In this document: positions 44,354 through 54,585 of the stretch, piece after piece | How positions within the stretch are numbered: the first letter of the stretch is position 1 | How the letters are laid out: each line of letters begins with the position of its first letter | IMG/VR virus record: IMGVR_UViG_3300027749_002876 | Location: 372,001-436,000 of that record | DNA length: 64,000 nt | Direction: 5' to 3' (one strand) | Notes under the pieces: model-generated | What the model was told of the DNA's origin: nothing | What the model saw: the letters and a program-made list of their open reading frames with translations, nothing else | Database searches by the model: none | Translations under genes and position numbers: made by a program

Positions 44354-44382
44354 TTGACAATAATTTAAAATCCTGCTATAAT
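44354..44382 (+). promoter_or_regulatory. Sigma70 promoter upstream of the leader/attenuator
   Basis: TTGACA-17-TATAAT with TGn extension. Confidence 0.9.
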
Positions 44383-44417
44383 ACATATTAGTTGAAGAAC
44401 AGGACTAAATAAAAACT

Positions 44418-44555
44418 ATGATGAATAAACCTTGTAACATGCTGAAACATATCGGACAGTGGCTAACGTTAGCCAGTGCATCCTTTGTGCCAGCATATCC
44501 ATCAAGTATTCGTGGCTCAAATGATAACCAAGAGATAAGCCCGGGGACTAGGTAA
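44418..44555 (+). CDS. Putative attenuator leader peptide (45 aa, all 20 amino acids)
   Basis: MMNKPCNMLKHIGQWLTLASASFVPAYPSSIRGSNDNQEISPGTR*; 36 distinct codons; weak AGGA SD. Confidence 0.6.
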   Translation: MMNKPCNMLKHIGQWLTLASASFVPAYPSSIRGSNDNQEISPGTR

Positions 44556-44583
44556 CAAGTTAACATCATAACTACTTTTATCT

Positions 44584-44623
44584 AACCCCTGGGAACTAAG
44601 AAATCTCAGGGGTTTTTGCTTTT
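44584..44623 (+). terminator. Intrinsic terminator with competing antiterminator (44540-44555 pairs with 44578-44593)
   Basis: aacccctggga-loop-tctcaggggtt, 11-bp stem followed by tttgctttt. Confidence 0.85.
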
Positions 44624-44634
44624 ACAGAGAGGAT

Positions 44635-44663
44635 TTGACAATAAATGGATAAAGAGATACAAT
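44635..44663 (+). promoter_or_regulatory. Sigma70 promoter
   Basis: TTGACA-17-TACAAT. Confidence 0.7.
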
Positions 44664-44812
44664 ACAAAACTACTGAAACAAAGCGTGATTGGTTTAGCAA
44701 TCATGTTCTGACGAAGGAGCAAGTAGCACAGTTGATACAAAATAAGATCGACCGTGCTAAAGTCTATCAAGAGGCTGTTAAGAAAGTCAACCGACTAACT
44801 TATACTGATTGA
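44645..44812 (+). CDS. Small hypothetical protein (55 aa)
   Basis: MDKEIQYKTTETKRDWFSNHVLTKEQVAQLIQNKIDRAKVYQEAVKKVNRLTYTD; GAGGA upstream. Confidence 0.5.
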   Translation: MDKEIQYKTTETKRDWFSNHVLTKEQVAQLIQNKIDRAKVYQEAVKKVNRLTYTD

Positions 44813-44960
44813 TGACAGCGTGAATAGGCAACGAGAGCCGGAATACAGCGTTAAATGTATCGAATGGGCGGACAGTACACATGAAAGCATGGAGACAACA
44901 TGTTAGTAAGACTACTGGGTAGGGTATTAACCCTACCATGTCGTGTAGAGATACACGGCA
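44813..44960 (+). ncRNA. Unidentified multi-hairpin RNA
   Basis: GC-richer non-coding stretch; stems ggtaggg/ccctacc, tgtcgtgta-GAGA-tacacggca, agcatg/catgtt. Confidence 0.55.
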
Positions 44961-45046
44961 TTCTAAAATATACCTAGTGAAAAACAATATTAGCTGAAAA
45001 CGCTAGACCCATTAGATCAGGGAGTACTAGGTGTGTTTTAGAATGC
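44958..45046 (+). ncRNA. Stem-bracketed small RNA A
   Basis: gcattctaaaatatacctagt / actaggtgtgttttagaatgc closing stem with G-U pairs. Confidence 0.65.
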
Positions 45047-45121
45047 GACCGTAACTCAGATGGATAGAGTACTAGGCTACGAACTTAGGAGTCGGGAATT
45101 CGAATTTCTCCGGTCGCACCA
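45045..45121 (+). tRNA. tRNA-Arg(ACG)
   Basis: Cloverleaf, loop CT-ACG-AA, CCA end. Confidence 0.92.
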
Positions 45122-45127
45122 ATATAT

Positions 45128-45204
45128 GGAAGCATAACTCAGTTGGCTAGAGTAACGGACTTTTAATCCGTGAGTCGAGGGTTCGAATCCCTCTGCTTCC
45201 ACCA
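45128..45204 (+). tRNA. tRNA-Lys(TTT)
   Basis: acgga-CT-TTT-AA-tccgt, GTTCGAATC, CCA. Confidence 0.95.
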
Positions 45205-45217
45205 GTATAAATACTGC

Positions 45218-45403
45218 ATGATAATTCAAACCATATCAGCAGTAAACGATATTACCAATCATCAATATCGCACAACAGTTTATAAAACATTAGAAGATCC
45301 TGCAACTAATAAGCAATACTTAGAGGTTGTACAGTATCTATACGATAAAGTAGGTAAATTAGAGCCTACACATTATAATAATCAAATAGATAAAAAAGCC
45401 TAA
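45218..45403 (+). CDS. Small hypothetical protein
   Basis: ATG 4 nt after TATAAATA, fills the tRNA spacer. Confidence 0.6.
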   Translation: MIIQTISAVNDITNHQYRTTVYKTLEDPATNKQYLEVVQYLYDKVGKLEPTHYNNQIDKKA

Positions 45404-45493
45404 GGAAACGTGGCAGAGTCCGGCCTATTGCAACAGTCTTGAAAACTGTCGATCCGAAAGGGTCCGTGAGTTCGAATCTCACCGTTTCTACCA
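45404..45493 (+). tRNA. tRNA-Ser(TGA)
   Basis: acagt-CT-TGA-AA-actgt, long variable arm, CCA. Confidence 0.95.
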
Positions 45494-45494
45494 T

Positions 45495-45571
45495 GGTGCT
45501 TGTCGTCAAGCGGTTAAGACCTCGGATTGTGATTCCGATATACGTGGGTTCGAATCCCATCAAGCACCCCA
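45495..45571 (+). tRNA. tRNA-His(GTG)
   Basis: tcgga-TT-GTG-AT-tccga, G-1/C73. Confidence 0.95.
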
Positions 45572-45572
45572 A

Positions 45573-45647
45573 GGATGTATAGCACAGCGGTAGTGCAATT
45601 CCTTCATACGGAATAGGTCAGTAGTTCAAATCTACTTACATCCACCA
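45573..45647 (+). tRNA. tRNA(CAT), elongator Met or Ile2
   Basis: attcc-TT-CAT-AC-ggaat, CCA. Confidence 0.88.
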
Positions 45648-45651
45648 TTAC

Positions 45652-45728
45652 AGCCTCATAGCTCAGTTGGTTAGAGCAATGTGTTGATAACGCATAGGTC
45701 CTCTGTTCGAGTCAGAGTGAGGCTACCA
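45652..45728 (+). tRNA. tRNA-Ile(GAT)
   Basis: atgtg-TT-GAT-AA-cgcat, CCA. Confidence 0.93.
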
Positions 45729-45733
45729 TTTAT

Positions 45734-45808
45734 ACCCCCTTCGCCAAGCGGTAAGGCCTCGGATTTTGATTCCGACATTCGGTGGTTCGAATCCATCAGG
45801 GGGTGCCA
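45734..45808 (+). tRNA. tRNA-Gln(TTG)
   Basis: tcgga-TT-TTG-AT-tccga, CCA. Confidence 0.95.
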
Positions 45809-45822
45809 GTGATAAATATAGA

Positions 45823-46377
45823 ATGATTTATTATAAACCATTAGAAATAGATTATTTTGCTACCATTATAAATAAATGTTTAGCATACGTAAAAACAGTC
45901 GATAGAGCCTATACTAGATCGTTGGCAAATACTAATTGGTATTATCTTGATTTAGAAATGTTAATGAAGGTATGCCCCGAACTTCAATTGGCATTTCAAA
46001 AACATGACTTAAAAATTATAATGGCAGCAGTCTATGTAATGTATTTACCTAAACACAGTAGACCTCATATTGACGCTTACCCTTCACACGCCAGAGTAAA
46101 TTTACCATTACTAAATTGTCAAGACACATATACTAATTTTTATACTAGTGACACTGAATCTCCAAGATATGTTAATCCAGATGGTGGTGGGAGATTCTGT
46201 TTCATGGCTGATAAGTATGAAAATCTAGTATTAGTTGATAGAGTAGAAATAAAACAAGCGACGGTGTTAAGAACAAAAGTATTGCATAGTGTGTATTTAC
46301 CCATAGATAATCCTGTGCCTAGAATTACACTATCATTAGCTTTTGACAAAGACCCTATTTATTTACTTGAAAATTAA
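45823..46377 (+). CDS. 2OG-Fe(II) oxygenase-like protein
   Basis: PHID...RVNLP...LHSV...RITLS; ATG 4 nt after ATAAATA. Confidence 0.6.
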   Translation: MIYYKPLEIDYFATIINKCLAYVKTVDRAYTRSLANTNWYYLDLEMLMKVCPELQLAFQKHDLKIIMAAVYVMYLPKHSRPHIDAYPSHARVNLPLLNCQDTYTNFYTSDTESPRYVNPDGGGRFCFMADKYENLVLVDRVEIKQATVLRTKVLHSVYLPIDNPVPRITLSLAFDKDPIYLLEN

Positions 46378-46385
46378 CTGTTTAT

Positions 46386-46535
46386 GGGATAGACGATAGG
46401 TTTAAGTCCCTGTCAATCTAATCACAGTGGGGTTAACTGTGATGACACTATAGTATGATTGACGGGTAGTATAAACTTGCCTATACGAGACAATCTAATG
46501 AGGCTTATTAACAATAAGATAGTTAGGCTCCCACC
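46386..46535 (+). ncRNA. Unidentified structured RNA
   Basis: cctgtcaatc/gattgacggg, atcacagt/actgtgat, cttatt/aataag; GGGA...TCCCACC ends. Confidence 0.6.
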
Positions 46536-46541
46536 TTTATT

Positions 46542-46616
46542 GGGTCCTTAGTTCAATGGATAGAATACGATGCTTCGAACTTCGGGATGTGGGTTCAATT
46601 CCTGCAGGACCCGCCA
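46542..46616 (+). tRNA. tRNA-Arg(TCG)
   Basis: Loop CT-TCG-AA, acceptor gggtcct/aggaccc, CCA. Confidence 0.9.
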
Positions 46617-46664
46617 ACAAGTGATTAAATACAATTAGTGATAATAACAGAAAAGGAGTACTAC

Positions 46665-47225
46665 ATGGCTGTTCTAGCACTAGATATCTCGGGAGTTCCC
46701 CGGCAATGGATATCAAATGATGACGCAATTACCTATAAAGCAAAAGATGCCATTGCATGGTCAATGGGGAACATTGTGGCTAGATATCGAGGTGGCACAC
46801 AAAATGACGGCACATTAAGTTACTTAGAAGCTAGTAGCATTATTGCCATCAAAGGTCATGGATTCAATCCATATAAACACTCATGTGTAGCACTAACTAA
46901 TAAAACATTGTTCGGTCGTGATAGACATGTATGTGCTTATTGCGGTGAACAGTTTCCCAATTATCATCTATTAAGTCGTGACCACATTGTCCCTAGAAGT
47001 AAGGGTGGTGAAAACACTTGGATGAACGTGGTTACCAGTTGTAAAACTTGTAACAGTAAAAAAGGACATAAGAGTTTAAAAGAAGTACGTATGGAATTAT
47101 TATACGCACCTTATGTCCCAAATCACTACGAAAATATGATACTACAACATAGAACTATACTTGCTGACCAAATGGAATATTTGTTAGCAGGTGTTCCAAA
47201 ACATAGTAGAATATTATTAAGTTAG
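46665..47225 (+). CDS. HNH endonuclease (McrA-like)
   Basis: RDRHVCAYCG...DHIVPRSKGG..TWMNVVTSCKTCNSKKG; SD AAGGAG. Confidence 0.9.
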   Translation: MAVLALDISGVPRQWISNDDAITYKAKDAIAWSMGNIVARYRGGTQNDGTLSYLEASSIIAIKGHGFNPYKHSCVALTNKTLFGRDRHVCAYCGEQFPNYHLLSRDHIVPRSKGGENTWMNVVTSCKTCNSKKGHKSLKEVRMELLYAPYVPNHYENMILQHRTILADQMEYLLAGVPKHSRILLS

Positions 47226-47254
47226 TGTACAATATTATTAAATAAAATACATAT

Positions 47255-47330
47255 TCCTTGATAGCTCAGTCGGTAGAGCAAAGCACTGTTAATGCTTGGG
47301 TCACACGTTCGAACCGTGTTCAAGGAGCCA
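47255..47330 (+). tRNA. tRNA-Asn(GTT)
   Basis: aagca-CT-GTT-AA-tgctt, CCA. Confidence 0.95.
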
Positions 47331-47337
47331 AATTTCC

Positions 47338-47411
47338 GCCCTACTAGTACAATGGTAGTACACTGGTTTTGTAATCCTGTGATGGCAGTTCAATTCTGTC
47401 GTGGGGCACCA
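47338..47411 (+). tRNA. tRNA-Thr(TGT)
   Basis: Loop TT-TGT-AA; anticodon stem contains mismatches; CCA. Confidence 0.8.
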
Positions 47412-47468
47412 AATAAATGCTGTTTTTAGAGTTGAGGACTAAATACTAGTATACAAGAAAGTTCAACT

Positions 47469-48068
47469 ATGAAAATGAGCAAATCACAAGCAGGTAAATT
47501 AGGCGCAGAAGTTTCTGCACTAATTACAGCAAAAAAAAAGCAAGCAAATATAGAAGCATATCTGTCTAACCCAAAAAAATGTGGGCATTGTAATGCACTC
47601 ATTAATTATGAGGGTAGATATAAAAAATTTTGTAATTCATCTTGCTCTGCATCACATAATAATACAAAAAGATTAATTGTTTCAACTAATAGTTGTCCTC
47701 AATGTAGTAAGCTAATTGGAAAAAATAGTAAATATTGTTCGGTTCGTTGTCAGCAAGATTTTCAATCAGCAGAAACTATTAGAAAATGGATTGCAAGGGA
47801 AACAATAACGGGATTATCTGCTGTTCGCCGGCATATCAAAGAACAACAGGATAGTAAATGTGCTGAATGCGGTATCGCTGAGTGGAATGGAAAAAATATA
47901 ACATTAGAGCTTGAGCATAGAGACGGAAACAGTGATAATAATACTCCTGAAAATTTATGTTTATTATGCCCAAATTGTCATAGCCAAACCCCAACATACA
48001 AAGCAAAAAATAAAGGTAAGGGTAGACATTCGCGCCGAGAGCGATACAAAAACGGTCAAAGTTATTGA
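47469..48068 (+). mobile_element. HNH homing endonuclease within the tRNA array
   Basis: Zinc ribbons plus CAECG...LELEHRDGN..NN...NL.LLCPNCHSQT. Confidence 0.9.
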
Positions 48069-48079
48069 CAACAAAGTAG

Positions 48080-48154
48080 CTGGCGTTAGTATAATGGATA
48101 ATACAATCGGCTTCTACCCGATGAATGTGGGTTCGATTCCTGCACGCCGGACCA
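48080..48154 (+). tRNA. tRNA-Arg(TCT) copy 1
   Basis: atcgg-CT-TCT-AC-ccgat, CCA. Confidence 0.93.
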
Positions 48155-48736
48155 TCATTGAATTAGAAGTTGCCAGTCACTATGACTATAATGGTAATCT
48201 TCTAATATTTCTAACATTCGTGAAAAAACTATTAAGGCTCTTTTATGATTTACCAGTTCAGTATGATGAATGTTTATTTTTTTCTCAACAAAAGATTTTA
48301 ATATATTATCACCCTCTTTTTTTAATTTGATTTTTTTTGCAACAATGTTCAATTTTGTTATTAGAGCGTTACAATCTACTATAGCAGTATTGGTTTGATT
48401 TTGTGCATGATGTATGTCAAACTTCATTTGTAAAATTAAATCGTCAAATTCTGGATTTATCTGTTGACTGTATTGTGATACCATATTTGAAAGTCTTGCA
48501 TAAACTTCAGCATCAAGATTGGTATCATCATAATGATCTCCGGTACTATCATAGTGTTCACGTTTAACAGGATCACTTAATGTTTCATATGCTAATTTGA
48601 TTCGTTTAAATTTTTCTATATCACCACCTTTATCGGGATGATGTGTTTGTGCTAGTATTCTATATTTTTGTTTGATATCATCGGGAGTACAATTTTTGGG
48701 TAATTCTAGTTCATCGTATAAGGTGTTGTTTTCCAT
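48155..48736 (-). CDS. DnaJ-domain (J-domain) protein
   Basis: LYDELEL...IKQKYRILA..HHPDKGGD...AYETLSDPVKR..YD. Confidence 0.92.
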   Translation of the reverse strand: MENNTLYDELELPKNCTPDDIKQKYRILAQTHHPDKGGDIEKFKRIKLAYETLSDPVKREHYDSTGDHYDDTNLDAEVYARLSNMVSQYSQQINPEFDDLILQMKFDIHHAQNQTNTAIVDCNALITKLNIVAKKIKLKKEGDNILKSFVEKKINIHHTELVNHKRALIVFSRMLEILEDYHYSHSDWQLLIQ

Positions 48737-48748
48737 ACGACTATTTAT

Positions 48749-48803
48749 CTGGGGTTAGCCTTCTAAGCAATCAATACAGGTTCTATTTTTGTACTATAGA
48801 CCA
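48749..48803 (+). pseudogene. Decayed tRNA-Arg(TCT) copy lacking the D-arm
   Basis: ctggggttag-[deletion]-ccttctaagcaatcaatacaggttc...gacca matches the tRNA at 50158-50232. Confidence 0.8.
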
Positions 48804-48807
48804 AAAT

Positions 48808-48836
48808 TTGACAATAAATTCAATCGGTACTATAAT
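48808..48836 (+). promoter_or_regulatory. Sigma70 promoter
   Basis: TTGACA-17-TATAAT. Confidence 0.85.
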
Positions 48837-48925
48837 ATATGTATAGATTGATTTAGCAGGTATGTTTATAATAAAACCCGCTGATTATTTGTATAAAAAA
48901 CACATCATTAAATACGGAGTTTTCC

Positions 48926-50104
48926 ATGAGAATTAATTCTATTGCTAGTACGATATTAGCAATCATACTTGTAGGATGCGGTGGCGGAGGTGGTCAACCA
49001 ACTACACCTATCATTGAAGCATATCCTCAAATTATAGATAACAATATAAAAAACAAGTTTGCTATTAAAAGTGTAAACATGGTTTTAAATAGTGATAGCC
49101 TGTTAGGACTACCCGGATGGACTAACATTGATGACCATATTAAAAACATTAAAGCATTGGGTGCTAATGATGTTAAAGTAACGATTAGTGCAGGGTATTA
49201 CGATACCCCATCTTCTAATAGTCCTAATTCAAATATTAACTTTAATCCAAGTGACAATGATTTGCTAACATTCTTTCGAAAGCTTAAAGCGGCAGGTTTA
49301 ACTATAACAGTTTACCCTTTTGTACATAAAAATACAAACGTTACCAATTTGTTAAGTACTGTTCATTCATCACCTTCTAATTTTGACGAATGGATATCTA
49401 ACCATACTAGTAGTATGTCAAGAATAGCAAATATAGCACAGCAAGGATCTGTGGATAGATTTGTAATTATAGGAGATGAGGTTCAACATCTAACGTATGA
49501 TGTTAAAAATCAAAATGGTTGGTTAAATCTCATTACAGAAATACGCAAGGTATATAAAGGACAATTAACCACTGTAATATATTCAAATGGAATGTACTAC
49601 AATGGAAAAAATCAGGTTGATATGGTTGGTGAGACTATATTAAGTAAATTGGATATTATTGGTGTAGGATGGTTTCCTAAATACTTAACTAATTCAAATA
49701 ATCCAACAGTTGCTGATTTGATTGCAGGTTGGAAAAATAATACAAATGGTGTAGACACTATTAAGTTTTTTGAATTAGTTAATCAAAAATATAAAAAACC
49801 AATTTGGATAGCTGATATGGCAATTCACAGTTTTGACGGAGACAATATTGATCCTGATAATATATACAACAACCTAATTAATTTAGTAACGGACGAACAG
49901 GAGCAAGCCGATGAATATGAAGCACTATTTACGGTATTGAGTTACAACATGGGCAATTGGTTTTTGGGAATGAGCATTGACAGTTATAACAATTTTCCTA
50001 GCAATTATACATTGCCAAGGCATTTAAATTCACCGTATAGTGAAGATATACGAGGTAAGATCGCTGAGGGTGTTGTCCGTAAATGGTATCGTCAGAAGAT
50101 GTAG
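48926..50104 (+). CDS. Lipoprotein with TIM-barrel glycoside hydrolase-like (GH113/GTA-like) domain
   Basis: Lipobox LVGC; IGDEV...IRKVYKGQLT...LDIIGV...KPIWIAD...DEQEQADEYEA. Confidence 0.65.
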   Translation: MRINSIASTILAIILVGCGGGGGQPTTPIIEAYPQIIDNNIKNKFAIKSVNMVLNSDSLLGLPGWTNIDDHIKNIKALGANDVKVTISAGYYDTPSSNSPNSNINFNPSDNDLLTFFRKLKAAGLTITVYPFVHKNTNVTNLLSTVHSSPSNFDEWISNHTSSMSRIANIAQQGSVDRFVIIGDEVQHLTYDVKNQNGWLNLITEIRKVYKGQLTTVIYSNGMYYNGKNQVDMVGETILSKLDIIGVGWFPKYLTNSNNPTVADLIAGWKNNTNGVDTIKFFELVNQKYKKPIWIADMAIHSFDGDNIDPDNIYNNLINLVTDEQEQADEYEALFTVLSYNMGNWFLGMSIDSYNNFPSNYTLPRHLNSPYSEDIRGKIAEGVVRKWYRQKM

Positions 50105-50107
50105 GGC

Positions 50108-50136
50108 TTGACACTAAATGAGTATTCTGCTATAAT
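50108..50136 (+). promoter_or_regulatory. Sigma70 promoter
   Basis: TTGACA-17-TATAAT with TGn. Confidence 0.85.
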
Positions 50137-50157
50137 ATAGACAAGCCAAAAATCTAT

Positions 50158-50232
50158 CTGGGGTTAGTATAATGGATAATACAGCTGCCTTCTAAGCAGT
50201 CAATACAGGTTCGATTCCTGTACCCCGGACCA
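50158..50232 (+). tRNA. tRNA-Arg(TCT) copy 2
   Basis: gctgc-CT-TCT-AA-gcagt, CCA. Confidence 0.95.
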
Positions 50233-50261
50233 AATGTTGTTTATTTACAACAACTAATAGT

Positions 50262-50372
50262 TTGACAATAAATCCAAATAGTGCTATACTCTATGTATAG
50301 ATTGATTGAACAAGTTCTTGGACACAGAGACACAAAAAAGAATTTGACAATAAATGGTGATTGTGATACAAT
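50262..50372 (+). promoter_or_regulatory. Tandem sigma70 promoters
   Basis: TTGACA-17-TATACT (50262-50290) and TTGACA-17-TACAAT (50344-50372). Confidence 0.8.
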
Positions 50373-50412
50373 CATAGCATGAGTTGAAAAAGTCATCGTA
50401 CTAATCAACAAA

Positions 50413-50424
50413 GTTCTTTAAAAA
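50413..50424 (+). promoter_or_regulatory. boxA-like Nus antitermination site
   Basis: GTTCTTTAAAAA fits GYTCTTTAANA, about 35 nt into the leader of a stable-RNA transcript. Confidence 0.65.
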
Positions 50425-50460
50425 GTTAAGTTATCATATAGCCCTGTACAAGTTACAGGG

Positions 50461-50695
50461 ACTATATGTAAACATATTAAGGGTTACCTGATCCGTTAGG
50501 ATGTACGAAGGTTATAAGGGTATCGACGGATACACGCCGAGACATACATCAGGAAGCGTATGATAACGAAAGTTATGAACGTGACGGGCAGTTAGGCAGT
50601 AATGACGAAGTTCAGAGTTCCCGGTGTACAAGCCGGGGTACAGGAGACGGTCCTGGACAGACGAATGTAGTTCCCATAATGTGTTTTCATATAGT
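50461..50695 (+). ncRNA. Stem-bracketed ornate RNA B (about 195-nt core)
   Basis: Closing stem actatatgtaaacatatta/taatgtgttttcatatagt; internal atccgtt/gacggat, catac/gtatg, ataac-GAAA-gttat, cccgg/ccggg, cagga/tcctg. Confidence 0.75.
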
Positions 50696-50825
50696 GTGTT
50701 ATTAGTTTTGCTGATGTAAGCCATGGGGGAAACGTCAACCCTGAGTAACTATGTATATAAACGGTAGTGTGGCCACCAATTCCGTTGAGACATAGCAAAC
50801 AGTGCGTCAGCAAAACTAATAATAT
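50696..50825 (+). ncRNA. Stem-bracketed RNA C
   Basis: ttattagttttgctgatg/cgtcagcaaaactaataa closing stem; internal ctatgt/acatag, aacgg/ccgtt. Confidence 0.7.
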
Positions 50826-50828
50826 TTG

Positions 50829-50904
50829 GCTCGGTTCATCTAGCGGCCTAGGATAGTGCCCTTTCACGGCATTCACACGGGTTCGAATCCCGTACCGAGC
50901 TCCA
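50829..50904 (+). tRNA. tRNA-Glu(TTC)
   Basis: gtgcc-CT-TTC-AC-ggcat, CCA. Confidence 0.95.
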
Positions 50905-51104
50905 GTATCCCGTTACTATTTTCGTTAAAATAGCGTTTGATTAGCGACAGAGATCCGGTGGCAGAAAACCGTTAGCGTGAGGATTAAAAATACCCTCGCA
51001 GGCTCTGATAGGCAGAATCTCAACTGCACACAGACTTTGAATAAATGAGATGGACAGAGTAACCGCTCAATTAAGGGCTGGCGTGGAAACAAGTAGCTTA
51101 TACT
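50905..51104 (+). ncRNA. Unidentified multi-stem RNA between tRNA-Glu and tRNA-Tyr
   Basis: ctatttt/aaaatag, cggt/accg, gcg..gagg/cctcgc, atctca/tgagat stems; no credible ORF. Confidence 0.6.
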
Positions 51105-51110
51105 AATTTT

Positions 51111-51195
51111 GGAGATGAAGCATCAATGGTGATGCAGTGGATTGTAAATCCGCCGCCTTATGGCACGACTGGTTCAATCCCAGTAATCTCCACCA
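51111..51195 (+). tRNA. tRNA-Tyr(GTA)
   Basis: gtgga-TT-GTA-AA-tccgc, long variable arm, CCA. Confidence 0.93.
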
Positions 51196-51200
51196 ATATT

Positions 51201-51275
51201 GGTCTCAAAGTGTTCACGGACGCATACATGCCTGTCACGCATGAGGAGCGGGATCGTTACCCGCTGGGACCGCCA
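51201..51275 (+). tRNA. tRNA-Asp(GTC)
   Basis: catgc-CT-GTC-AC-gcatg; atypical T-loop ATCGTTA. Confidence 0.88.
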
Positions 51276-51281
51276 AAATAT

Positions 51282-51310
51282 TTGACAACAAAAACTATTT
51301 GATATATAAT
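51282..51310 (+). promoter_or_regulatory. Sigma70 promoter
   Basis: TTGACA-17-TATAAT. Confidence 0.85.
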
Positions 51311-51327
51311 ACAGATTGTTTATAAAT

Positions 51328-51412
51328 GCGGGCATGGGGAAATTGGTTAGACCCAATAGACTTAAAATCTATCGCCTTGTGCATCCCGGTTCGAGTCCGG
51401 GTGCCCGCACCA
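51328..51412 (+). tRNA. tRNA-Leu(TAA)
   Basis: ataga-CT-TAA-AA-tctat, long variable arm. Confidence 0.95.
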
Positions 51413-51421
51413 AAGAATGAT

Positions 51422-51498
51422 GCCCCTTTAATTAAATCAGGTTATAATGCCGGCCTCATAAGCCGTTTTTCTGGGTTCAAATCCCAGCGGGGGTACCA
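51422..51498 (+). tRNA. tRNA(CAT), probably Ile2 (lysidine) or Met
   Basis: cggc-CT-CAT-AA-gccg, GCCCC acceptor, CCA. Confidence 0.8.
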
Positions 51499-51506
51499 TG
51501 TATTTA

Positions 51507-51595
51507 GGAGAGTTGGGTGAGTGGTTAAACCAGCAGATTGCTAATCTGTCACTGTGAATAACGGTGCGTGGGTTCGAATCCCACACTCTCCGCCA
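51507..51595 (+). tRNA. tRNA-Ser(GCT)
   Basis: gcaga-TT-GCT-AA-tctgt, long variable arm. Confidence 0.95.
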
Positions 51596-52157
51596 AACTT
51601 TTTAGTAATTCTTCAATGCTAATATTTAAGAATGATAACCCGAAAATAATTCGTGTGGTTTTGATATTTTCCACACTGTGAAAGTTTCTGCTATTCATTA
51701 GATACCAAGTACCAGTATTAAAAAAATATTCTTGTTGTGCAGATACCTCTTTATATGTAAGTACATTTCCTCCTACAGTATCACTTGCTAAATCTTCTTT
51801 ATCATAAAAGATAGTGCTAACATTATCTCCACCTAACTCAATATAAAAATTTATACTTGCTGTTCGCACTCTATCAGAGTGTGGTGGATATGATGCAAAT
51901 TCTATAGGATTTATATTATGTATAACACCAATTGTTGCATATAGTTTATGCTTAAACAATGGCTGGAATTCTTGTGTAGCTATGAGATTAATACTGTCGT
52001 TAGAAAAAAAATCACCAGCGGCACAGTTAATATCAGGACCTTGTATTGAACTGTGCCAATTTCTAGAACTAACATTTATTGGTCGATCTAGAGCGACTGA
52101 TTTAACTAAGTTAATTAAGTTATCAGATGGTTTAGGTAATTGCAAAGTATAAATCAT
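51549..52157 (-). CDS. 2OG-Fe(II) oxygenase-like protein; 3' end overlaps tRNA-Ser on the opposite strand
   Basis: PPHSD..TASINFY...FHSVEN...RIIFG; minus-strand TATAAATA upstream. Confidence 0.6.
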   Translation of the reverse strand: MIYTLQLPKPSDNLINLVKSVALDRPINVSSRNWHSSIQGPDINCAAGDFFSNDSINLIATQEFQPLFKHKLYATIGVIHNINPIEFASYPPHSDRVRTASINFYIELGGDNVSTIFYDKEDLASDTVGGNVLTYKEVSAQQEYFFNTGTWYLMNSRNFHSVENIKTTRIIFGLSFLNISIEELLKSLAESVGFEPTHRYSQ

Positions 52158-52196
52158 TTAATACAGTCTTATGTTTAAGACTGTATTTATACCGAA

Positions 52197-52386
52197 CGTT
52201 CCGGGTGTCTTCGGATAGTGTGACCCACACGATGAGAAGTACAGTGACATGTACGGGTGGTAGTCTTTAAACCTAAAGGCCGCTAGCAATGCGAGAACGG
52301 TCCCTGTCGGGAAGCGGGTGGAAGGAGTGTGTGATGGGTATGATAGCGTCATATCTTGATACTCTATAATTACCGCCGGGGGATGC
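52197..52386 (+). ncRNA. Unidentified GC-rich multi-stem RNA
   Basis: tccggg/cttcgga, ccac/gtgg around gtaca/tgtac, gtcttta/taaaggc, gggtatgat/gtcatatct, ggagtgt/atactct. Confidence 0.7.
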
Positions 52387-52387
52387 A

Positions 52388-52477
52388 GAGCATATTGAAA
52401 TACATTAAAGATAGGGTCGTATCGGTTCATTGAACCTTAGTACATACCAAGGTAGTTAGTGTGTTTCAATATGCTTT
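52388..52477 (+). ncRNA. Stem-bracketed small RNA D
   Basis: agcatattgaaatacattaa/ttagtgtgtttcaatatgct with G-U pairs. Confidence 0.65.
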
Positions 52478-52480
52478 TAT

Positions 52481-52556
52481 GTAGGTGTGTACCGAATGGT
52501 TAGGTAGCGGATTGCAAATCCGTGCTATGCAGGTTCGATCCCTGTCACCTACTCCA
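52481..52556 (+). tRNA. tRNA-Cys(GCA)
   Basis: gcgga-TT-GCA-AA-tccgt, U73, CCA. Confidence 0.95.
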
Positions 52557-52564
52557 GAATATAT

Positions 52565-52638
52565 GCGGGGTTGGCATATTGGTTGTGTCCTAGCCTTCCA
52601 AGCTAGTCAAAGGAGTTCGATTCTCCTACCCCGCTCCA
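52565..52638 (+). tRNA. tRNA-Gly(TCC)
   Basis: ctagc-CT-TCC-AA-gctag, U73, CCA. Confidence 0.95.
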
Positions 52639-52641
52639 AAA

Positions 52642-53202
52642 TTATCGTATAATAAGGTTAGAAAAAAGTTTAACGATATCATCCCATGCTATACGTCTGT
52701 CATTAGTTCGAAGGCTGTAACATTTTCTTGGTCCAATTCCAATTGCTCGGTGTATTGTAGAAGCATTTACTAAGTATGCCTTATTGTTGTTTGTATCATA
52801 CTGTTTGCTAGGAGTAAGTATAGGTTTGTATTTTGTAACTACTCCCCAGTTATCTTTATTTAAAGCCCCACCAGTAATTCCATCTACTTCAACCTCATCA
52901 TGGTCATAAAATTCTAGTACACCTGTACCACCGTCTATCCAATTAATGCCAAACATAAAATCTTCAGGAACTATTGCATCTGAATGCAATGCTCCTTTGA
53001 AATCTGTTTTTTTAAAATAACTTAGTTTACACCAATTTAAACCCAAAAGATTAATATATTCTGGTTTAAAAATATGATCGATTCTATCTAGTCTCATATA
53101 ATTAAATGGTAAATGGTCATCATCAAATCCCTTAAAGGAAGGCAATGTTACCTCACTGAATGCCGGTAAGTTTAACTCATATAGTTGTTCGGATGTAATC
53201 AT
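52642..53202 (-). CDS. 2OG-Fe(II) oxygenase-like protein
   Basis: LHSD...FGINW...IHRA...RKCYSLR. Confidence 0.55.
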   Translation of the reverse strand: MITSEQLYELNLPAFSEVTLPSFKGFDDDHLPFNYMRLDRIDHIFKPEYINLLGLNWCKLSYFKKTDFKGALHSDAIVPEDFMFGINWIDGGTGVLEFYDHDEVEVDGITGGALNKDNWGVVTKYKPILTPSKQYDTNNNKAYLVNASTIHRAIGIGPRKCYSLRTNDRRIAWDDIVKLFSNLIIR

Positions 53203-53230
53203 ATATATATTTAGTTGTTGACCAATAGTA

Positions 53231-53259
53231 TTGACAGATAAATAGTTTTTTGTTATAAT
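53231..53259 (+). promoter_or_regulatory. Sigma70 promoter
   Basis: TTGACA-17-TATAAT with TGn. Confidence 0.85.
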
Positions 53260-53267
53260 AGTAAAAT

Positions 53268-53344
53268 GCCCTGGTGGTGAAATTGGTAGACACAGCGGTC
53301 TTAGAAGCCGTAAGCTGAGAGTTCGAGTCTCTCCTAGGGCACCA
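53268..53344 (+). tRNA. tRNA-Leu(TAG) with short variable region
   Basis: gcggt-CT-TAG-AA-gccgt, only 5 nt before the T-stem. Confidence 0.88.
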
Positions 53345-53420
53345 AACTAAAACATATTAAACAGATGGATACAAGCTGTAGGTATACAGTGGTAACAGAA
53401 TGGTTAGTATGTTTTAGTTT
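53345..53420 (+). ncRNA. Stem-bracketed small RNA E
   Basis: aactaaaacatattaa/ttagtatgttttagtt fills the Leu-Ala spacer. Confidence 0.6.
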
Positions 53421-53494
53421 GGGGGATTGATGTAATGGGAGCCTGGGACCTTTGCAAGGTCTTCGTAACAGTTCGATTCTGTTATCCTCCACCA
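53421..53494 (+). tRNA. tRNA-Ala(TGC)
   Basis: ggacc-TT-TGC-AA-ggtct, G3-U70. Confidence 0.93.
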
Positions 53495-53500
53495 AGATAG

Positions 53501-53575
53501 CGCGGGGTAGAGAAGTAGTAACTCATCAGGCTCATAACCTGAAGATCGGCGGTGCGAATCCGTCCCCCGCATCCA
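53501..53575 (+). tRNA. Initiator tRNA-fMet(CAT)
   Basis: CGCGGGG 5' end with C1:A72 mismatch; tcagg-CT-CAT-AA-cctga. Confidence 0.9.
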
Positions 53576-53579
53576 GTTA

Positions 53580-53656
53580 CGGAGTGTAGCGCAGTCTGGT
53601 AGCGCACCTGGTTTGGGACCAGGGGGTCCAAAGTTCGAATCTTTGTACTCCGACCA
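53580..53656 (+). tRNA. tRNA-Pro(TGG)
   Basis: cctgg-TT-TGG-GA-ccagg, CCA. Confidence 0.95.
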
Positions 53657-53678
53657 TAGTTTTTTAAAAGGAAATGTT

Positions 53679-53846
53679 ATGACATGTAGAGGATATGATT
53701 CACGGGCAGTTAAACTTCCCAAAGCAGTTAAACGTGCGGCAACACTTATTCGTGATGCACATGTACGTGGAGCTTTTATTCGTAGTTTTGTAGAGATTGA
53801 AAAAAGCAATTCACGTACAAGTTCTCGTAAGGATAATAGCAAATGA
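53679..53846 (+). CDS. Small basic hypothetical protein
   Basis: SD AAGGA; 55 aa. Confidence 0.6.
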   Translation: MTCRGYDSRAVKLPKAVKRAATLIRDAHVRGAFIRSFVEIEKSNSRTSSRKDNSK

Positions 53847-54022
53847 CTAAAGGTAGCTTGCCAAGACCATACAGTGTTGATTTAAATACATTTGACAACA
53901 ACTGGAACAATATTTTTCGCAAGCCTGATCCAAGAACTATTGAGGATCAACAGAATGAAGATGAAGCGTTTGAAAAAATTGCTAATCAAACAGAAGTTAA
54001 AGATAGTAACCAAGGTGGTTAA
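53843..54022 (+). CDS. Small phage protein (59 aa)
   Basis: MTKGSLPRP...FDNNWNNIF; ATGA coupling; not in the ORF track. Confidence 0.65.
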   Translation: MTKGSLPRPYSVDLNTFDNNWNNIFRKPDPRTIEDQQNEDEAFEKIANQTEVKDSNQGG

Positions 54023-54027
54023 ATATC

Positions 54028-54103
54028 GGGTCGTTAGCTCAGTTGGTAGAGCGTCTGCCTTACACGCAGAATGTCGGGAGTTCGAGTCTCTCACGACCCA
54101 CCA
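54028..54103 (+). tRNA. tRNA-Val(TAC)
   Basis: tctgc-CT-TAC-AC-gcaga, CCA. Confidence 0.96.
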
Positions 54104-54118
54104 AACAAAGGAGTAATT

Positions 54119-54259
54119 ATGAGCAAAAGTGAAGATGTAATCAACAGAGCATACGGTCACATTGTGAAAGAAGTTAATCCTACAATTAGTTTTGATATAC
54201 TTGTATTTCGTGGTTTCAAATACTATTGGTACAAGTTGATTAGAAAAGTAACAAGATAA
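54119..54259 (+). CDS. Small hypothetical protein
   Basis: SD AAGGAG; 46 aa. Confidence 0.55.
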   Translation: MSKSEDVINRAYGHIVKEVNPTISFDILVFRGFKYYWYKLIRKVTR

Positions 54260-54284
54260 CCAAGTTTAACAATAGAAAGATGAT

Positions 54285-54506
54285 ATGACTGAAAGCAGAG
54301 CAAGATATACAAGTGAAGAAGCCGCACTCATGGTCGGTAGTCGATTTGATTTAGTTCTTATTGCCTCACAACGTGTAAGAGAATTAAAGCGTGGGCATAA
54401 ATCATTGCTCAATACAAAAGCAGGACCCACTGTAACTGCATTAATGGAAATTGAAGCTGGACTAGTTGGACGAGAATATCTCAAACGTATTAGAAAAAAT
54501 TTATAA
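54285..54506 (+). CDS. rpoZ: RNA polymerase omega subunit homologue
   Basis: ARYTSEEA...GSRFDLVLIASQRVREL...PTVTALMEIEAGLV aligns with RpoZ GNRFDLVLVAARRARQ...TVIALREIEEGLI. Confidence 0.88.
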   Translation: MTESRARYTSEEAALMVGSRFDLVLIASQRVRELKRGHKSLLNTKAGPTVTALMEIEAGLVGREYLKRIRKNL

Positions 54507-54511
54507 ACAAT

Positions 54512-54585
54512 GTCTCTCTAGTATAATGGCAGTACTGCGGTCTCCAAAACCGTTAGTGGGGGTTCGAGTCCCTCGGGGGATGCCA
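54512..54585 (+). tRNA. tRNA-Trp(CCA)
   Basis: gcggt-CT-CCA-AA-accgt, CCA. Confidence 0.93.

What the first reader, a model, noticed from the sequence alone, without database searches (positions are those of the whole stretch)
44958..53420. Family of RNAs bracketed by a shared closing stem (AAAYAYAYYA ... TRRTRTGTTT) with unrelated cargo
Seen: four elements (44958-45046, 50461-50695, 52388-52477, 53345-53420) have 16-21 bp closing stems sharing the core AAAYAYAYYA / TRRTRTGTTT. Their deviations are almost all U-G pairs in the + strand transcript, which points to pairing at the RNA level. The enclosed sequences (about 45, 195, 47 and 43 nt) are unrelated to each other, and three elements sit directly 5' of a tRNA. 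A fifth long stem (50696-50825) lacks the core. Inference: a common processing or protein-binding handle (RNase III-like) that releases variable small RNAs such as decoys, antitoxins or guides from the tRNA polycistron.
Basis: partly seen in the sequence, partly recalled or inferred. Interest (0 to 1): 0.75.

Follow-up and report, generated by a model that had tools for sequence, protein, structure and literature searches.

The report
Shared-stem small RNAs in phage tRNA operons
The four stems are real copies of a large, apparently undescribed family of small structured RNAs that sit between tRNA genes of uncultured freshwater giant phages, all closed by the same ~20-base-pair helix, which often starts at the CCA end of the preceding tRNA; what they do is unknown.

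Summary
Observation confirmed and extended. E1-E4 form 21-23 bp closing helices (fold z -7.6 to -8.3). They belong to a family with hundreds of copies in the tRNA arrays of related IMG/VR jumbo-phage contigs. The consensus is (N)ACCAUAUW-R-AAACACAUU...cargo...AGUGUGUUU-Y-WAUAUGGU.

The helix forms in RNA. Across 44 copies, 94.5% of cells pair (80.5% shuffled) and 15 of 20 pairs carry compensatory changes. 159 copies fold only on the tRNA-sense strand, 10 only on the opposite strand.

New point: in about half the copies the 5' arm begins with the CCA end of the upstream tRNA, and the 3' arm often ends at or near the next tRNA's +1. tRNA processing should therefore set the ends.

Cargos are G+C-rich (49% against 29% for the arms) and fall into about 160 sequence clusters. 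Several clusters show internal covariation, and 7.5% of cargos carry a tRNA T-arm. A relative with near-identical flanking tRNAs lacks E4, so the element is not needed for tRNA maturation.

RNase III cleavage is plausible but untested; the phage encodes no RNase III, dsRBD, Ro or RtcB. The cargo function is unknown. E5 is a separate conserved RNA. Two neighbouring unannotated RNAs dominate metatranscriptome depth.

The parts
44958..45046 (+). E1: handle-closed small RNA. 5' arm 44958-44979, cargo about 45 nt, 3' arm 45025-45046. It has the 'AUUCUAAAA' outer-stem subtype. The last 2 nt overlap tRNA-Arg(ACG).
   Evidence: R1: 47.5 bits, E 4e-7
45045..45121 (+). tRNA-Arg(ACG). Its 5' end coincides with the 3' end of E1.
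44635..44663 (+). Near-consensus sigma-70-type promoter (11 of 12) upstream of E1. A 12-of-12 match lies at 44354-44382.
50344..50372 (+). Sigma-70-type promoter (11 of 12) about 90 nt upstream of E2. It heads the unit E2-E5-tRNA-Glu-RNA_A.
50461..50695 (+). E2: handle-closed RNA with a 189-nt G+C-rich cargo. Arms 50461-50483 and 50673-50695, with two mismatches.
   Evidence: Orthologue in L127, and the 5' part of the cargo is conserved in L191, L226 and L229. A 98% copy lies at C1:121555-121743. Metatranscriptome contig covers 50483-50675 with 0 differences.
50696..50825 (+). E5: a separate conserved ~130-nt structured RNA. It has a 22-23 bp closing stem without the family core, and two internal hairpins. 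tRNA-Glu follows 3 nt later.
   Evidence: 9 homologues, 40 pairs, 10 with compensatory change
50829..50904 (+). tRNA-Glu(UUC), directly after E5.
52387..52477 (+). E3: handle-closed small RNA with a 47-nt cargo. It lies directly after the structured RNA_B and 3 nt before tRNA-Cys.
   Evidence: 63.5 bits. Its cargo family also includes L150 and L195. Metatranscriptome contig 52364-52468.
52481..52556 (+). tRNA-Cys(GCA), downstream of E3.
53231..53259 (+). Consensus sigma-70-type promoter (12 of 12) heading tRNA-Leu-E4-tRNA-Ala and the tRNAs that follow.
53268..53344 (+). tRNA-Leu(UAG). Its 3' CCA (53342-53344) forms the first pairs of the E4 stem.
53342..53422 (+). E4: handle-closed small RNA that fills the whole tRNA-Leu/tRNA-Ala spacer. 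Its cargo family is shared with L129 and L124, where the neighbouring tRNAs are different.
   Evidence: (60.5 bits)
53421..53494 (+). tRNA-Ala(UGC). Its 5' end is flush with the 3' arm of E4.

Best explanation
E1-E4 are genes for small structured RNAs that occupy spacers of sigma-70-driven phage tRNA operons.

Shown: in the + strand transcript, a sequence-conserved ~20-bp helix (the handle) closes each cargo. The 5' strand of the handle typically starts at the ACCA end of the preceding tRNA, or at an ACCA-like sequence. Its 3' strand ends at or within a few nucleotides of the next tRNA's +1.

Inferred: the tRNA-processing machinery defines the ends. RNase P cutting the downstream tRNA would make the 3' end of the element. 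Maturation of the upstream tRNA's 3' end would free the 5' end; because that end lies inside a duplex, this probably needs a double-strand endonuclease, and host RNase III is the best candidate. The remaining helix would then cap both ends of the released cargo RNA against exonucleases.

The cargos are diverse, G+C-rich modules conserved within families, and some are tRNA-like. They presumably act in trans; their targets are unknown.

In short, the helix, its strand, its placement, cargo conservation and transcription are shown. The enzymes, the release, the stability and the trans function are inferred.
For: Helix:
- 44 copies gathered without reference to the stem show 94.5% of cells paired against 80.5% in shuffles.
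- 15 of 20 pairs have double-sided changes, in 128 cells.
- Sliding the partner columns drops pairing to 32-54%.

Strand:
- Of 195 non-redundant copies, 159 satisfy the stem only on the tRNA-sense strand and 10 only on the opposite strand.
- G.U 326 against A.C 130, and 78 of those A.C sit at one position.

Placement:
- The stem's CCA is exactly the upstream tRNA's 3' CCA in 89 of 194 copies.
- The 3' arm lies within a few nt of a tRNA 5' end in about 67 of 194 copies, overlapping +1 to +3 in about 40.
- All copies lie in tRNA arrays and are co-oriented with the tRNAs.

Transcription:
- Consensus promoters are present and there are no + strand terminators.
- Metatranscriptome contigs cover E2, E3 and E4, while the minus-strand ORFs between them have zero depth.

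Cargo is not filler:
- Cargo G+C is 49%, the arms 29% and the genome 36.7%.
- Cargo families have conserved unpaired motifs plus covarying hairpins.
- 16 of 212 cargos have a T-arm motif, against 0.05 expected by chance.

Not a tRNA-maturation requirement: L105 has near-identical tRNA-Leu and tRNA-Ala with a 10-nt spacer in place of E4.
Against: - No RNA ends were mapped. The only expression data are assembled contigs, which have no direction or end information.
- Depth over the elements is modest (10-40), far below the neighbouring RNA_A and RNA_B (up to about 7000). Strong accumulation is therefore not shown.
- The phage encodes no RNase III or dsRBD, and the host is unknown.
- The sequence conservation of the arms goes beyond what pairing or generic RNase III recognition requires. 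Examples are the U.G at +7 in about two thirds of copies and the frequent A.C or other non-pair at -1.
- The arms of neighbouring elements can pair with each other almost as well as with their own partners (18.2 against 19.0 of 21 pairs), so alternative long-range pairings are not excluded.
- Cargo-only folding energies are barely below those of shuffles (mean z -0.5).
Confidence: 0.5

Rival explanations
1. The hairpins act only in cis as punctuation or insulators of the tRNA operon. They would separate neighbouring tRNAs, guide or pace processing, or block exonucleases. The cargo would be an incidental loop with no function of its own.
For: Placement is flush between tRNAs, with the CCA drawn into the stem. 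Many cargos are unique (121 singleton clusters). Cargo-only folding is near that of shuffles. Metatranscriptome depth is low.
Against: A close relative has the same tRNA-Leu/tRNA-Ala pair without the element, and most tRNA junctions in every array lack one. Cargos are G+C-rich and conserved within families, with covariation. Runs of 4-5 elements occur with no tRNA between them.
Confidence: 0.2
2. The elements are DNA-level cassettes. The conserved inverted arms would serve as recombination linkers (as proposed for PeSL motifs in T4-type phages) or as the ends of a MITE-like mobile element. They would shuffle RNA genes and tRNA genes between co-infecting phages, and the RNA hairpin would be secondary.
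For: - Presence or absence between near-identical flanks.
- A variant that keeps only the outer palindrome, AACT-A-GTTT (joint 53346->53418).
- The same cargo family in different tRNA contexts, and different cargos after the same tRNA-Lys(UUU).
- Highly rearranged tRNA order among relatives.
- Tandem runs of elements.
Against: - The strong strand asymmetry (159:10) and G.U excess are not expected for double-stranded DNA repeats.
- Copies are never found outside tRNA arrays or in the opposite orientation.
- No target-site duplication was seen.
- No transposase is adjacent; the neighbours are HNH and GIY-YIG homing-type genes only.
- This reading is compatible with, rather than exclusive of, an RNA function.
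Confidence: 0.15
3. The handle is the binding site of a specific protein, from the phage or the host. That would make a Y-RNA-like family of RNPs in which the variable cargo is the effector or specificity module.
For: The arms are conserved in sequence, not just in pairing. A U.G wobble sits at a fixed position and a non-pair at -1. 7.5% of cargos are tRNA-like, as in YrlA. One handle carries many cargos.
Against: No TROVE/Ro, RtcB or dsRBD gene is in the genome. No Rfam YrlA or Y RNA match reaches threshold. No candidate partner protein was identified.
Confidence: 0.1

Closest known systems
Leader-trailer processing stems cut by RNase III (bacterial rRNA operons; T7 early-mRNA R sites; RNase III site in the T4 tRNA precursor). 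From my own knowledge of the literature.
   Same: A ~20-bp duplex formed by sequences flanking a structured RNA inside a polycistronic stable-RNA transcript. The duplex is A+U-rich and interrupted by a single non-pair. Several sites in one phage share sequence, as the T7 sites do.
   Different: Cleavage is untested. The cargos are 30-190 nt and of more than 100 unrelated kinds. The stem incorporates the CCA of a tRNA. No phage RNase III was found.
T4 RNA C and RNA D (species 1 and 2), small stable RNAs encoded in the T4 tRNA cluster, roles unknown (PMC3014915)
   Same: Non-tRNA small RNAs encoded inside a phage tRNA gene cluster, co-oriented with the tRNAs and presumably matured by the tRNA-processing enzymes. 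The function is unknown in both cases. The phage's terminase is of the T4 superfamily.
   Different: T4 has two such RNAs, with no reported shared handle. Here one conserved helix closes hundreds of copies and about 160 cargo clusters. Sequence relatedness to the T4 RNAs was not tested.
PeSL motifs (promoter-early stem-loop cassettes) of T4-type phages (PMC2839356, PMC4122927)
   Same: Short conserved repeated motifs containing a stem-loop. They flank variable segments and coincide with insertions, deletions and replacements between close relatives.
   Different: PeSLs combine a promoter with a terminator-like stem and flank protein ORFs. The handle carries no promoter, encloses RNA cargo, and shows RNA-strand-specific G.U pairing.
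Bacterial Y RNAs / YrlA with Ro (Rsr). From my own knowledge; Rfam RF02553.
   Same: A long closing stem used as a common handle plus a variable module, which in 7.5% of copies here contains a tRNA T-arm.
   Different: No Rfam match reaches threshold. No TROVE or RtcB gene is present. The stem sequence differs. In tRNA-like cargos the handle sits where the acceptor stem would be.
tRNA-linked small RNAs released by tRNA-processing enzymes: murid herpesvirus 68 tRNA-pre-miRNA units, and the E. coli 3'ETS(leuZ) and ITS spacer RNAs. From my own knowledge.
   Same: Hairpin or spacer RNAs placed directly beside tRNAs, so that RNase P or RNase Z generate their ends. The spacer itself is the functional product.
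   Different: Different domain of life or different RNA architecture. None has a conserved 20-bp handle or modular cargo.
GOLLD RNA (RF02032), a large phage RNA found next to tRNAs
   Same: Same genomic niche. A relative (L376) has a GOLLD RNA (197 bits) in its tRNA array, directly followed by a handle element.
   Different: The window and its genome record have no GOLLD. The handle elements are small and are not matched by the GOLLD model.

Membership tests
RNase III processing stem | About two helical turns of dsRNA formed by the sequences flanking the product RNA | tested here: met
   21-23 bp in E1-E4. 20 pairs supported by covariation.
RNase III processing stem | Staggered cleavage by RNase III inside the stem | not testable with these tools
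   Only assembled contigs were available and no ends were reported (table 6: none).
RNase III processing stem | An RNase III is available (phage-encoded or host) | tested here: inconclusive
   No PF14622, PF00636 or PF00035 match in the 524-kb record. The host is unknown.
MITE / TIR transposable element | Terminal inverted repeats shared by copies with unrelated interiors | tested here: met
MITE / TIR transposable element | Target-site duplication; copies scattered in both orientations; arm mismatches with no strand preference | tested here: not met
   No duplication at the filled versus empty tRNA-Leu/tRNA-Ala site. Copies occur only in tRNA arrays and are co-oriented. G.U 326 against A.C 130.
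Y RNA / YrlA | Match to the family model, and a Ro (TROVE) gene in the genome or nearby | tested here: not met
   No hit in the window at E <= 5. Only sub-threshold hits overlapping tRNAs in relatives. TROVE and RtcB are absent.
PeSL cassette | A sigma-70 early promoter joined to the stem-loop, flanking ORFs | tested here: not met
   Promoter matches lie elsewhere (44354, 44635, 50344, 53231 and others), not in the arms. The elements flank or enclose RNA genes.
PeSL cassette | A repeated motif at the borders of indels and replacements between close relatives | tested here: met
Stable RNAs of phage tRNA clusters (T4 RNA C/D type) | Non-tRNA RNA gene inside the tRNA cluster, co-transcribed with it | tested here: met
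Stable RNAs of phage tRNA clusters (T4 RNA C/D type) | Accumulates as a discrete processed species | tested here: inconclusive
   Contigs cover E2, E3 and E4 at depth 10-40, with no end information.
CRISPR / TIGR-type guide arrays | Direct repeats separating short spacers, with an associated effector gene | tested here: not met
   The repeats are inverted around each cargo. Cargos are 30-190 nt and structured. The neighbours are small HNH and GIY-YIG genes only.
Any Rfam 15 family | Covariance-model match | tested here: not met
   Only tRNAs at gathering score. Nothing on the elements at E <= 5-10.

The most novel reading that the evidence does not exclude
The conserved helix, with its fixed U.G wobble and central non-pair, is the docking module of a still unidentified phage or host protein. 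The fast-diversifying cargos (about 160 clusters, some tRNA-like) would be interchangeable specificity modules, for example decoys or aptamers deployed against host RNA- or tRNA-targeting defences. They would be exchanged between phages as cassettes by recombination in the arms and in the flanking tRNA genes. On this reading the family is a modular, handle-plus-payload RNA arsenal carried in tRNA operons.
Probability: 0.15. Interest if true: 0.85.

Novelty: new variant of a known kind. Interest (0 to 1): 0.62.

Why it matters
Phage tRNA clusters are usually read as codon-usage or anti-defence tRNA supplies. This abundant freshwater jumbo-phage clade also uses them as expression platforms for many non-tRNA structured RNAs. 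These include the handle family, E5, RNA_A and RNA_B, and GOLLD in a relative.

A single conserved helix that starts at a tRNA's CCA end and closes more than 100 different cargos gives a simple searchable signature for finding such RNAs. It also gives a defined substrate for studying how RNase P, 3'-end maturation and dsRNA cleavage cooperate on complex precursors.

The roles of T4 RNA C and D have been unknown since the 1970s. A large comparative family like this makes that question approachable.

Tried and rejected
- **Rfam:** gathering and permissive thresholds gave nothing but tRNAs on the elements.
- **Close relatives by DNA:** megablast of the region against cultured phages matched only single tRNAs.
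- **Relatives through neighbouring proteins:** GH113-like ORF 48926-50104 gave none. ORF 52642-53202 gave only a 100% identical contig. The ORFs inside the array are not conserved.
- **Tail-fibre-like protein as a taxon marker:** the domain is promiscuous and uninformative.
- **Nearest cultured phages by terminase** (Phosso, PA5oct, Vibrio 2.275.O, GAP32; 43-51% aa): no model R1 hits, so the family is specific to this clade.
- **Bacterial genomes:** the 3'-arm pattern gave chance-level single hits. Three small MAG contigs (L251, L302, L337) carry real elements and are probably mis-binned phage.
- **Phage-encoded partners:** RNase III, dsRBD, Ro/TROVE and RtcB are all absent.
- **Guide or antisense idea:** the cargos of E1, E3 and E4 have no matches longer than 13 nt to either strand of the phage record, which is chance level.
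- **GOLLD upstream of E1:** none.
- **Transposon reading:** no target duplication, no transposase, and a strand bias.
- **Pairing of arms across the intervening tRNA instead of around the cargo:** not excluded by energetics, since own and cross pairing differ little (19.0 against 18.2 of 21). It is disfavoured by isolated copies with idiosyncratic, compensated outer stems (E1, E3).
- **Not run:** a complex prediction with RNase III. Its shuffled-RNA control cannot distinguish this helix from any other dsRNA.

Full report
**Setting**

The window is bases 372001-436000 of a 524,565-bp IMG/VR virus record with 36.7% G+C. Its large terminase belongs to the T4 superfamily. It has more than 599 close relatives (82-97% aa) among uncultured IMG/VR contigs. 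The nearest cultured phages are only 43-51% identical: Sinorhizobium Phosso, Pseudomonas PA5oct, Vibrio 2.275.O and Cronobacter GAP32.

Window 45045-54585 holds 26 tRNA genes, all on the + strand. They are interspersed with small HNH and GIY-YIG homing-type genes, a DnaJ-domain ORF and a GH113-like ORF. Eight consensus or near-consensus sigma-70 promoters lie on the + strand, and there are no + strand intrinsic terminators. The tRNAs and everything between them on that strand are therefore probably transcribed as polycistrons by a host-type RNA polymerase.

They are 21-23 bp long, and their deviations are G.U pairs on the + strand.

E1, E3 and E4 fold as single long hairpins with z-scores of -7.6 to -8.3, and none of 200 shuffles folds as well. 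E2, with a 189-nt interior, gives z = -3.1.

A scan of the whole record for the core inside an uninterrupted long stem found only E1, E3 and E4. E2, which has two mismatches, was found by the mismatch-tolerant scans. No Rfam family matches them.

**The family is large**

I anchored on the 3' end of tRNA-Leu(UAG) and fetched 48 related tRNA-array loci. A stem finder that did not know the family then recovered 47 non-redundant elements with the same arms.

109 of those loci carry complete hairpins, giving 195 non-redundant copies, and 101 of the 109 hold three or more tRNAs.

In 596 Gb of bacterial genomes the same pattern gave chance-level hits. The exceptions are three small MAG contigs that look like mis-binned phage.

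A covariance model (R1) built from 44 copies found 1-12 copies per related large contig, always clustered in the tRNA array. It found none in the four nearest cultured phages. The family is therefore confined to this uncultured freshwater clade.

**Anatomy of the handle**

In register, the consensus is (N)ACCAUAUW-R-AAACACAUU ... cargo ... AGUGUGUUU-Y-WAUAUGGU(N). Three regions can be distinguished:
- The inner nine pairs are nearly invariant in sequence. They carry a U.G wobble at a fixed position (+7) in about two thirds of copies.
- Position -1 is paired in only about half of copies. A.C, G-C and A-U are all common there, and G.U is almost absent.
- The outer eight pairs vary with full compensation. 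Examples are CCAUAU/AUAUGG, GCAUUCU/AGAAUGC, CUUUAU/AUAAAG and UUCAUAU/AUAUGAA.

On the 44-sequence alignment, 94.5% of cells pair against 80.5% after shuffling partners. 15 of 20 pairs show double-sided changes, in 128 cells. Sliding the partner columns drops pairing to 32-54%.

Of the 195 copies, 159 satisfy the stem only on the tRNA-sense strand, 25 on both strands and 10 only on the opposite strand (one lies in a locus with no tRNA). G.U outnumbers A.C by 326 to 130, and 78 of the A.C cases sit at position -1.

In 89 of 194 copies the CCA in the 5' arm is exactly the 3' CCA of the upstream tRNA. Most often that tRNA is Lys(UUU), Gln(UUG), Glu(UUC) or Leu(UAG). The 3' arm lies within a few nucleotides of a tRNA 5' end in about 67 of 194 copies, and overlaps positions +1 to +3 in about 40.

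In the window:
- E4 uses the CCA of tRNA-Leu and abuts tRNA-Ala.
- E1 overlaps tRNA-Arg by 2 nt.
- E3 ends 3 nt before tRNA-Cys.
- E2 abuts E5, which ends 3 nt before tRNA-Glu.

The element therefore often fills an inter-tRNA spacer completely. RNase P acting on the downstream tRNA would create its 3' end. Maturation of the upstream tRNA must separate it at a point that lies inside a duplex.

Relatives also have runs of four or five elements in a row after tRNA-Lys(UUU). In one relative an element directly follows a GOLLD RNA.

**The cargo is not filler**

229 distinct cargos (median about 50 nt) fall into about 160 similarity clusters. They average 49% G+C, against 29% for the arms and 36.7% for the genome.

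Several families have conserved unpaired motifs together with covarying internal hairpins:
- the 90-nt family (15 of 39 pairs compensated);
- the T-arm family;
- the E4 family (12 of 33 pairs).

E3 and E2 also have orthologues.

16 of 212 cargos contain a canonical T-arm motif, against 0.05 expected. In those copies the handle sits where an extended acceptor stem would be.

The same cargo family occurs between different tRNAs in different phages, and different cargos follow the same tRNA.

L105 has tRNA-Leu and tRNA-Ala genes nearly identical to the window's, but a 10-nt spacer in place of E4. One metatranscriptome variant keeps only the outer palindrome of E4. The elements are therefore dispensable for maturation of their neighbouring tRNAs, and they turn over quickly.

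**Expression**

Four freshwater metatranscriptomes, available only as assembled contigs, were laid on 50100-54100. Contigs cover the E2 cargo (50483-50675, no differences), E3 and E4 at depths of 10-40.

The minus-strand ORFs between them have zero depth in all four runs. That argues the signal is RNA rather than contaminating DNA.

No ends can be read from contigs. The elements are far less abundant than two neighbouring unannotated RNAs (see "Neighbours" below).

**Mechanism**

The best-supported reading is that these are small-RNA genes riding in tRNA operons. The handle forms in the precursor and tRNA-processing enzymes set the ends. A duplex-cutting enzyme, most plausibly host RNase III, is probably needed at the CCA side. 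The remaining helix would then protect the released cargo.

The phage itself encodes no RNase III, dsRBD, Ro or RtcB. The sequence conservation of the arms, the fixed U.G and the -1 non-pair go beyond what generic dsRNA recognition needs. A specific protein partner therefore remains possible.

A DNA-level role of the repeated arms in cassette exchange, analogous to PeSL motifs (PMC2839356, PMC4122927), fits the indel and reshuffling data. It is not exclusive of an RNA function, but it cannot by itself explain the strand-specific G.U pattern.

No antisense targets of the window's cargos exist in the phage record. A guide role therefore has no support.

**Neighbours**

E5 (50696-50825) is a separate conserved ~130-nt RNA with its own 22-bp closing stem. 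In relatives that stem also begins with ACCA.

RNA_A (about 50905-51110) and RNA_B (about 52190-52386, directly upstream of E3) are conserved, covarying structured RNAs with no Rfam match. They carry by far the highest metatranscriptome depth in the region.

**Caveat on the record**

Self-alignment suggests that the 524-kb record joins two things. One is a complete genome of about 352 kb (172.9-524.6 kb) with a 4.1-kb terminal repeat; the window lies in this part. The other is about 173 kb of a second, related phage in inverted orientation.

The 'second tRNA array' at 115-126.5 kb carries three more handle elements and a 98% copy of the E2 cargo. It probably belongs to that second phage.

**Novelty**

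Small stable RNAs inside phage tRNA clusters are known: T4 RNA C and D, whose roles are unknown (PMC3014915). Leader-trailer processing stems are also known. I found no description of one conserved CCA-initiated helix closing more than 100 cargo types (within the limits of that library). I rate it a new variant of a known kind.

Noticed in passing
window 50905-51110 (RNA_A): A ~205-nt intergenic RNA between tRNA-Glu and a weak tRNA-Tyr. It is very strongly conserved in 11 relatives and has a multi-hairpin fold. It has no Rfam match. Word depth reaches about 7100 in freshwater metatranscriptomes, 10-100 times that of the neighbouring tRNAs.
   Followed up: partly
window ~52190-52386 (RNA_B): A ~190-nt structured RNA directly upstream of E3. 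In 10 relatives, 23 of 52 predicted pairs carry compensatory changes. It has no Rfam match, and metatranscriptome depth reaches about 7300.
   Followed up: partly
whole record G000 (C1:1-524565): The record looks like a chimeric join. C1:172924-177012 repeats at 520477-524565 (99.6% identity), which implies a genome of about 352 kb. The segment 0-173 kb is collinear with 400-512 kb in inverted orientation at only 74-91% identity, which suggests part of a second related phage. The 57 tRNAs in two arrays are probably two phages' arrays.
   Followed up: partly
L376:2580-3541 (relative G007): A GOLLD RNA (RF02032, 197 bits) with an embedded tRNA-Asn lies in the tRNA array of a 340-kb relative. It is promoter-driven and is directly followed by a handle element whose 5' arm begins after '...GCUCCA'. 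This clade may be one source of lake-derived GOLLD RNAs.
   Followed up: partly
handle positions -1 and +7 (e.g. window 52397/52467 and 52405/52459 in E3): Position -1 is A.C in 28-39% of copies, and G.U is almost never used there. Position +7 is U.G in about two thirds of copies. Both features are unexplained. They could be recognition or anti-recognition features for a nuclease or a binding protein.
   Followed up: no
window 44383-44957: About 300-570 nt of apparently non-coding sequence lies between two consensus promoters (44354, 44635) and E1. In a relative, the same handle subtype (AUUCUAAAAC) follows GOLLD. No Rfam match here, and expression was not examined.
   Followed up: partly
L375:2848-3046 and L376:7394-7501; G000 C1:288480-288896: Relatives' arrays also carry a group I intron match and a permuted tmRNA. 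ARAGORN calls a permuted tmRNA in G000. The permuted and beta-type tmRNA and the sigma-70 promoters hint at a proteobacterial (perhaps betaproteobacterial) host.
   Followed up: no
window 51111-51192: A tRNA with a GUA anticodon (by my own reading of the sequence) and a long variable arm is detected only by Rfam (35 bits). ARAGORN missed it in the window.
   Followed up: no
relatives, e.g. L375:1783-2993 and L376:6021-6800: The slot after tRNA-Lys(UUU) is a hot spot holding runs of 4-5 handle elements. 67 of the 89 elements that start at a tRNA CCA follow Lys(UUU), Gln(UUG) or Glu(UUC), which are the three tRNAs whose wobble U is thiolated and which are common targets of anticodon nucleases. 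This may simply reflect shared ancestry.
   Followed up: no
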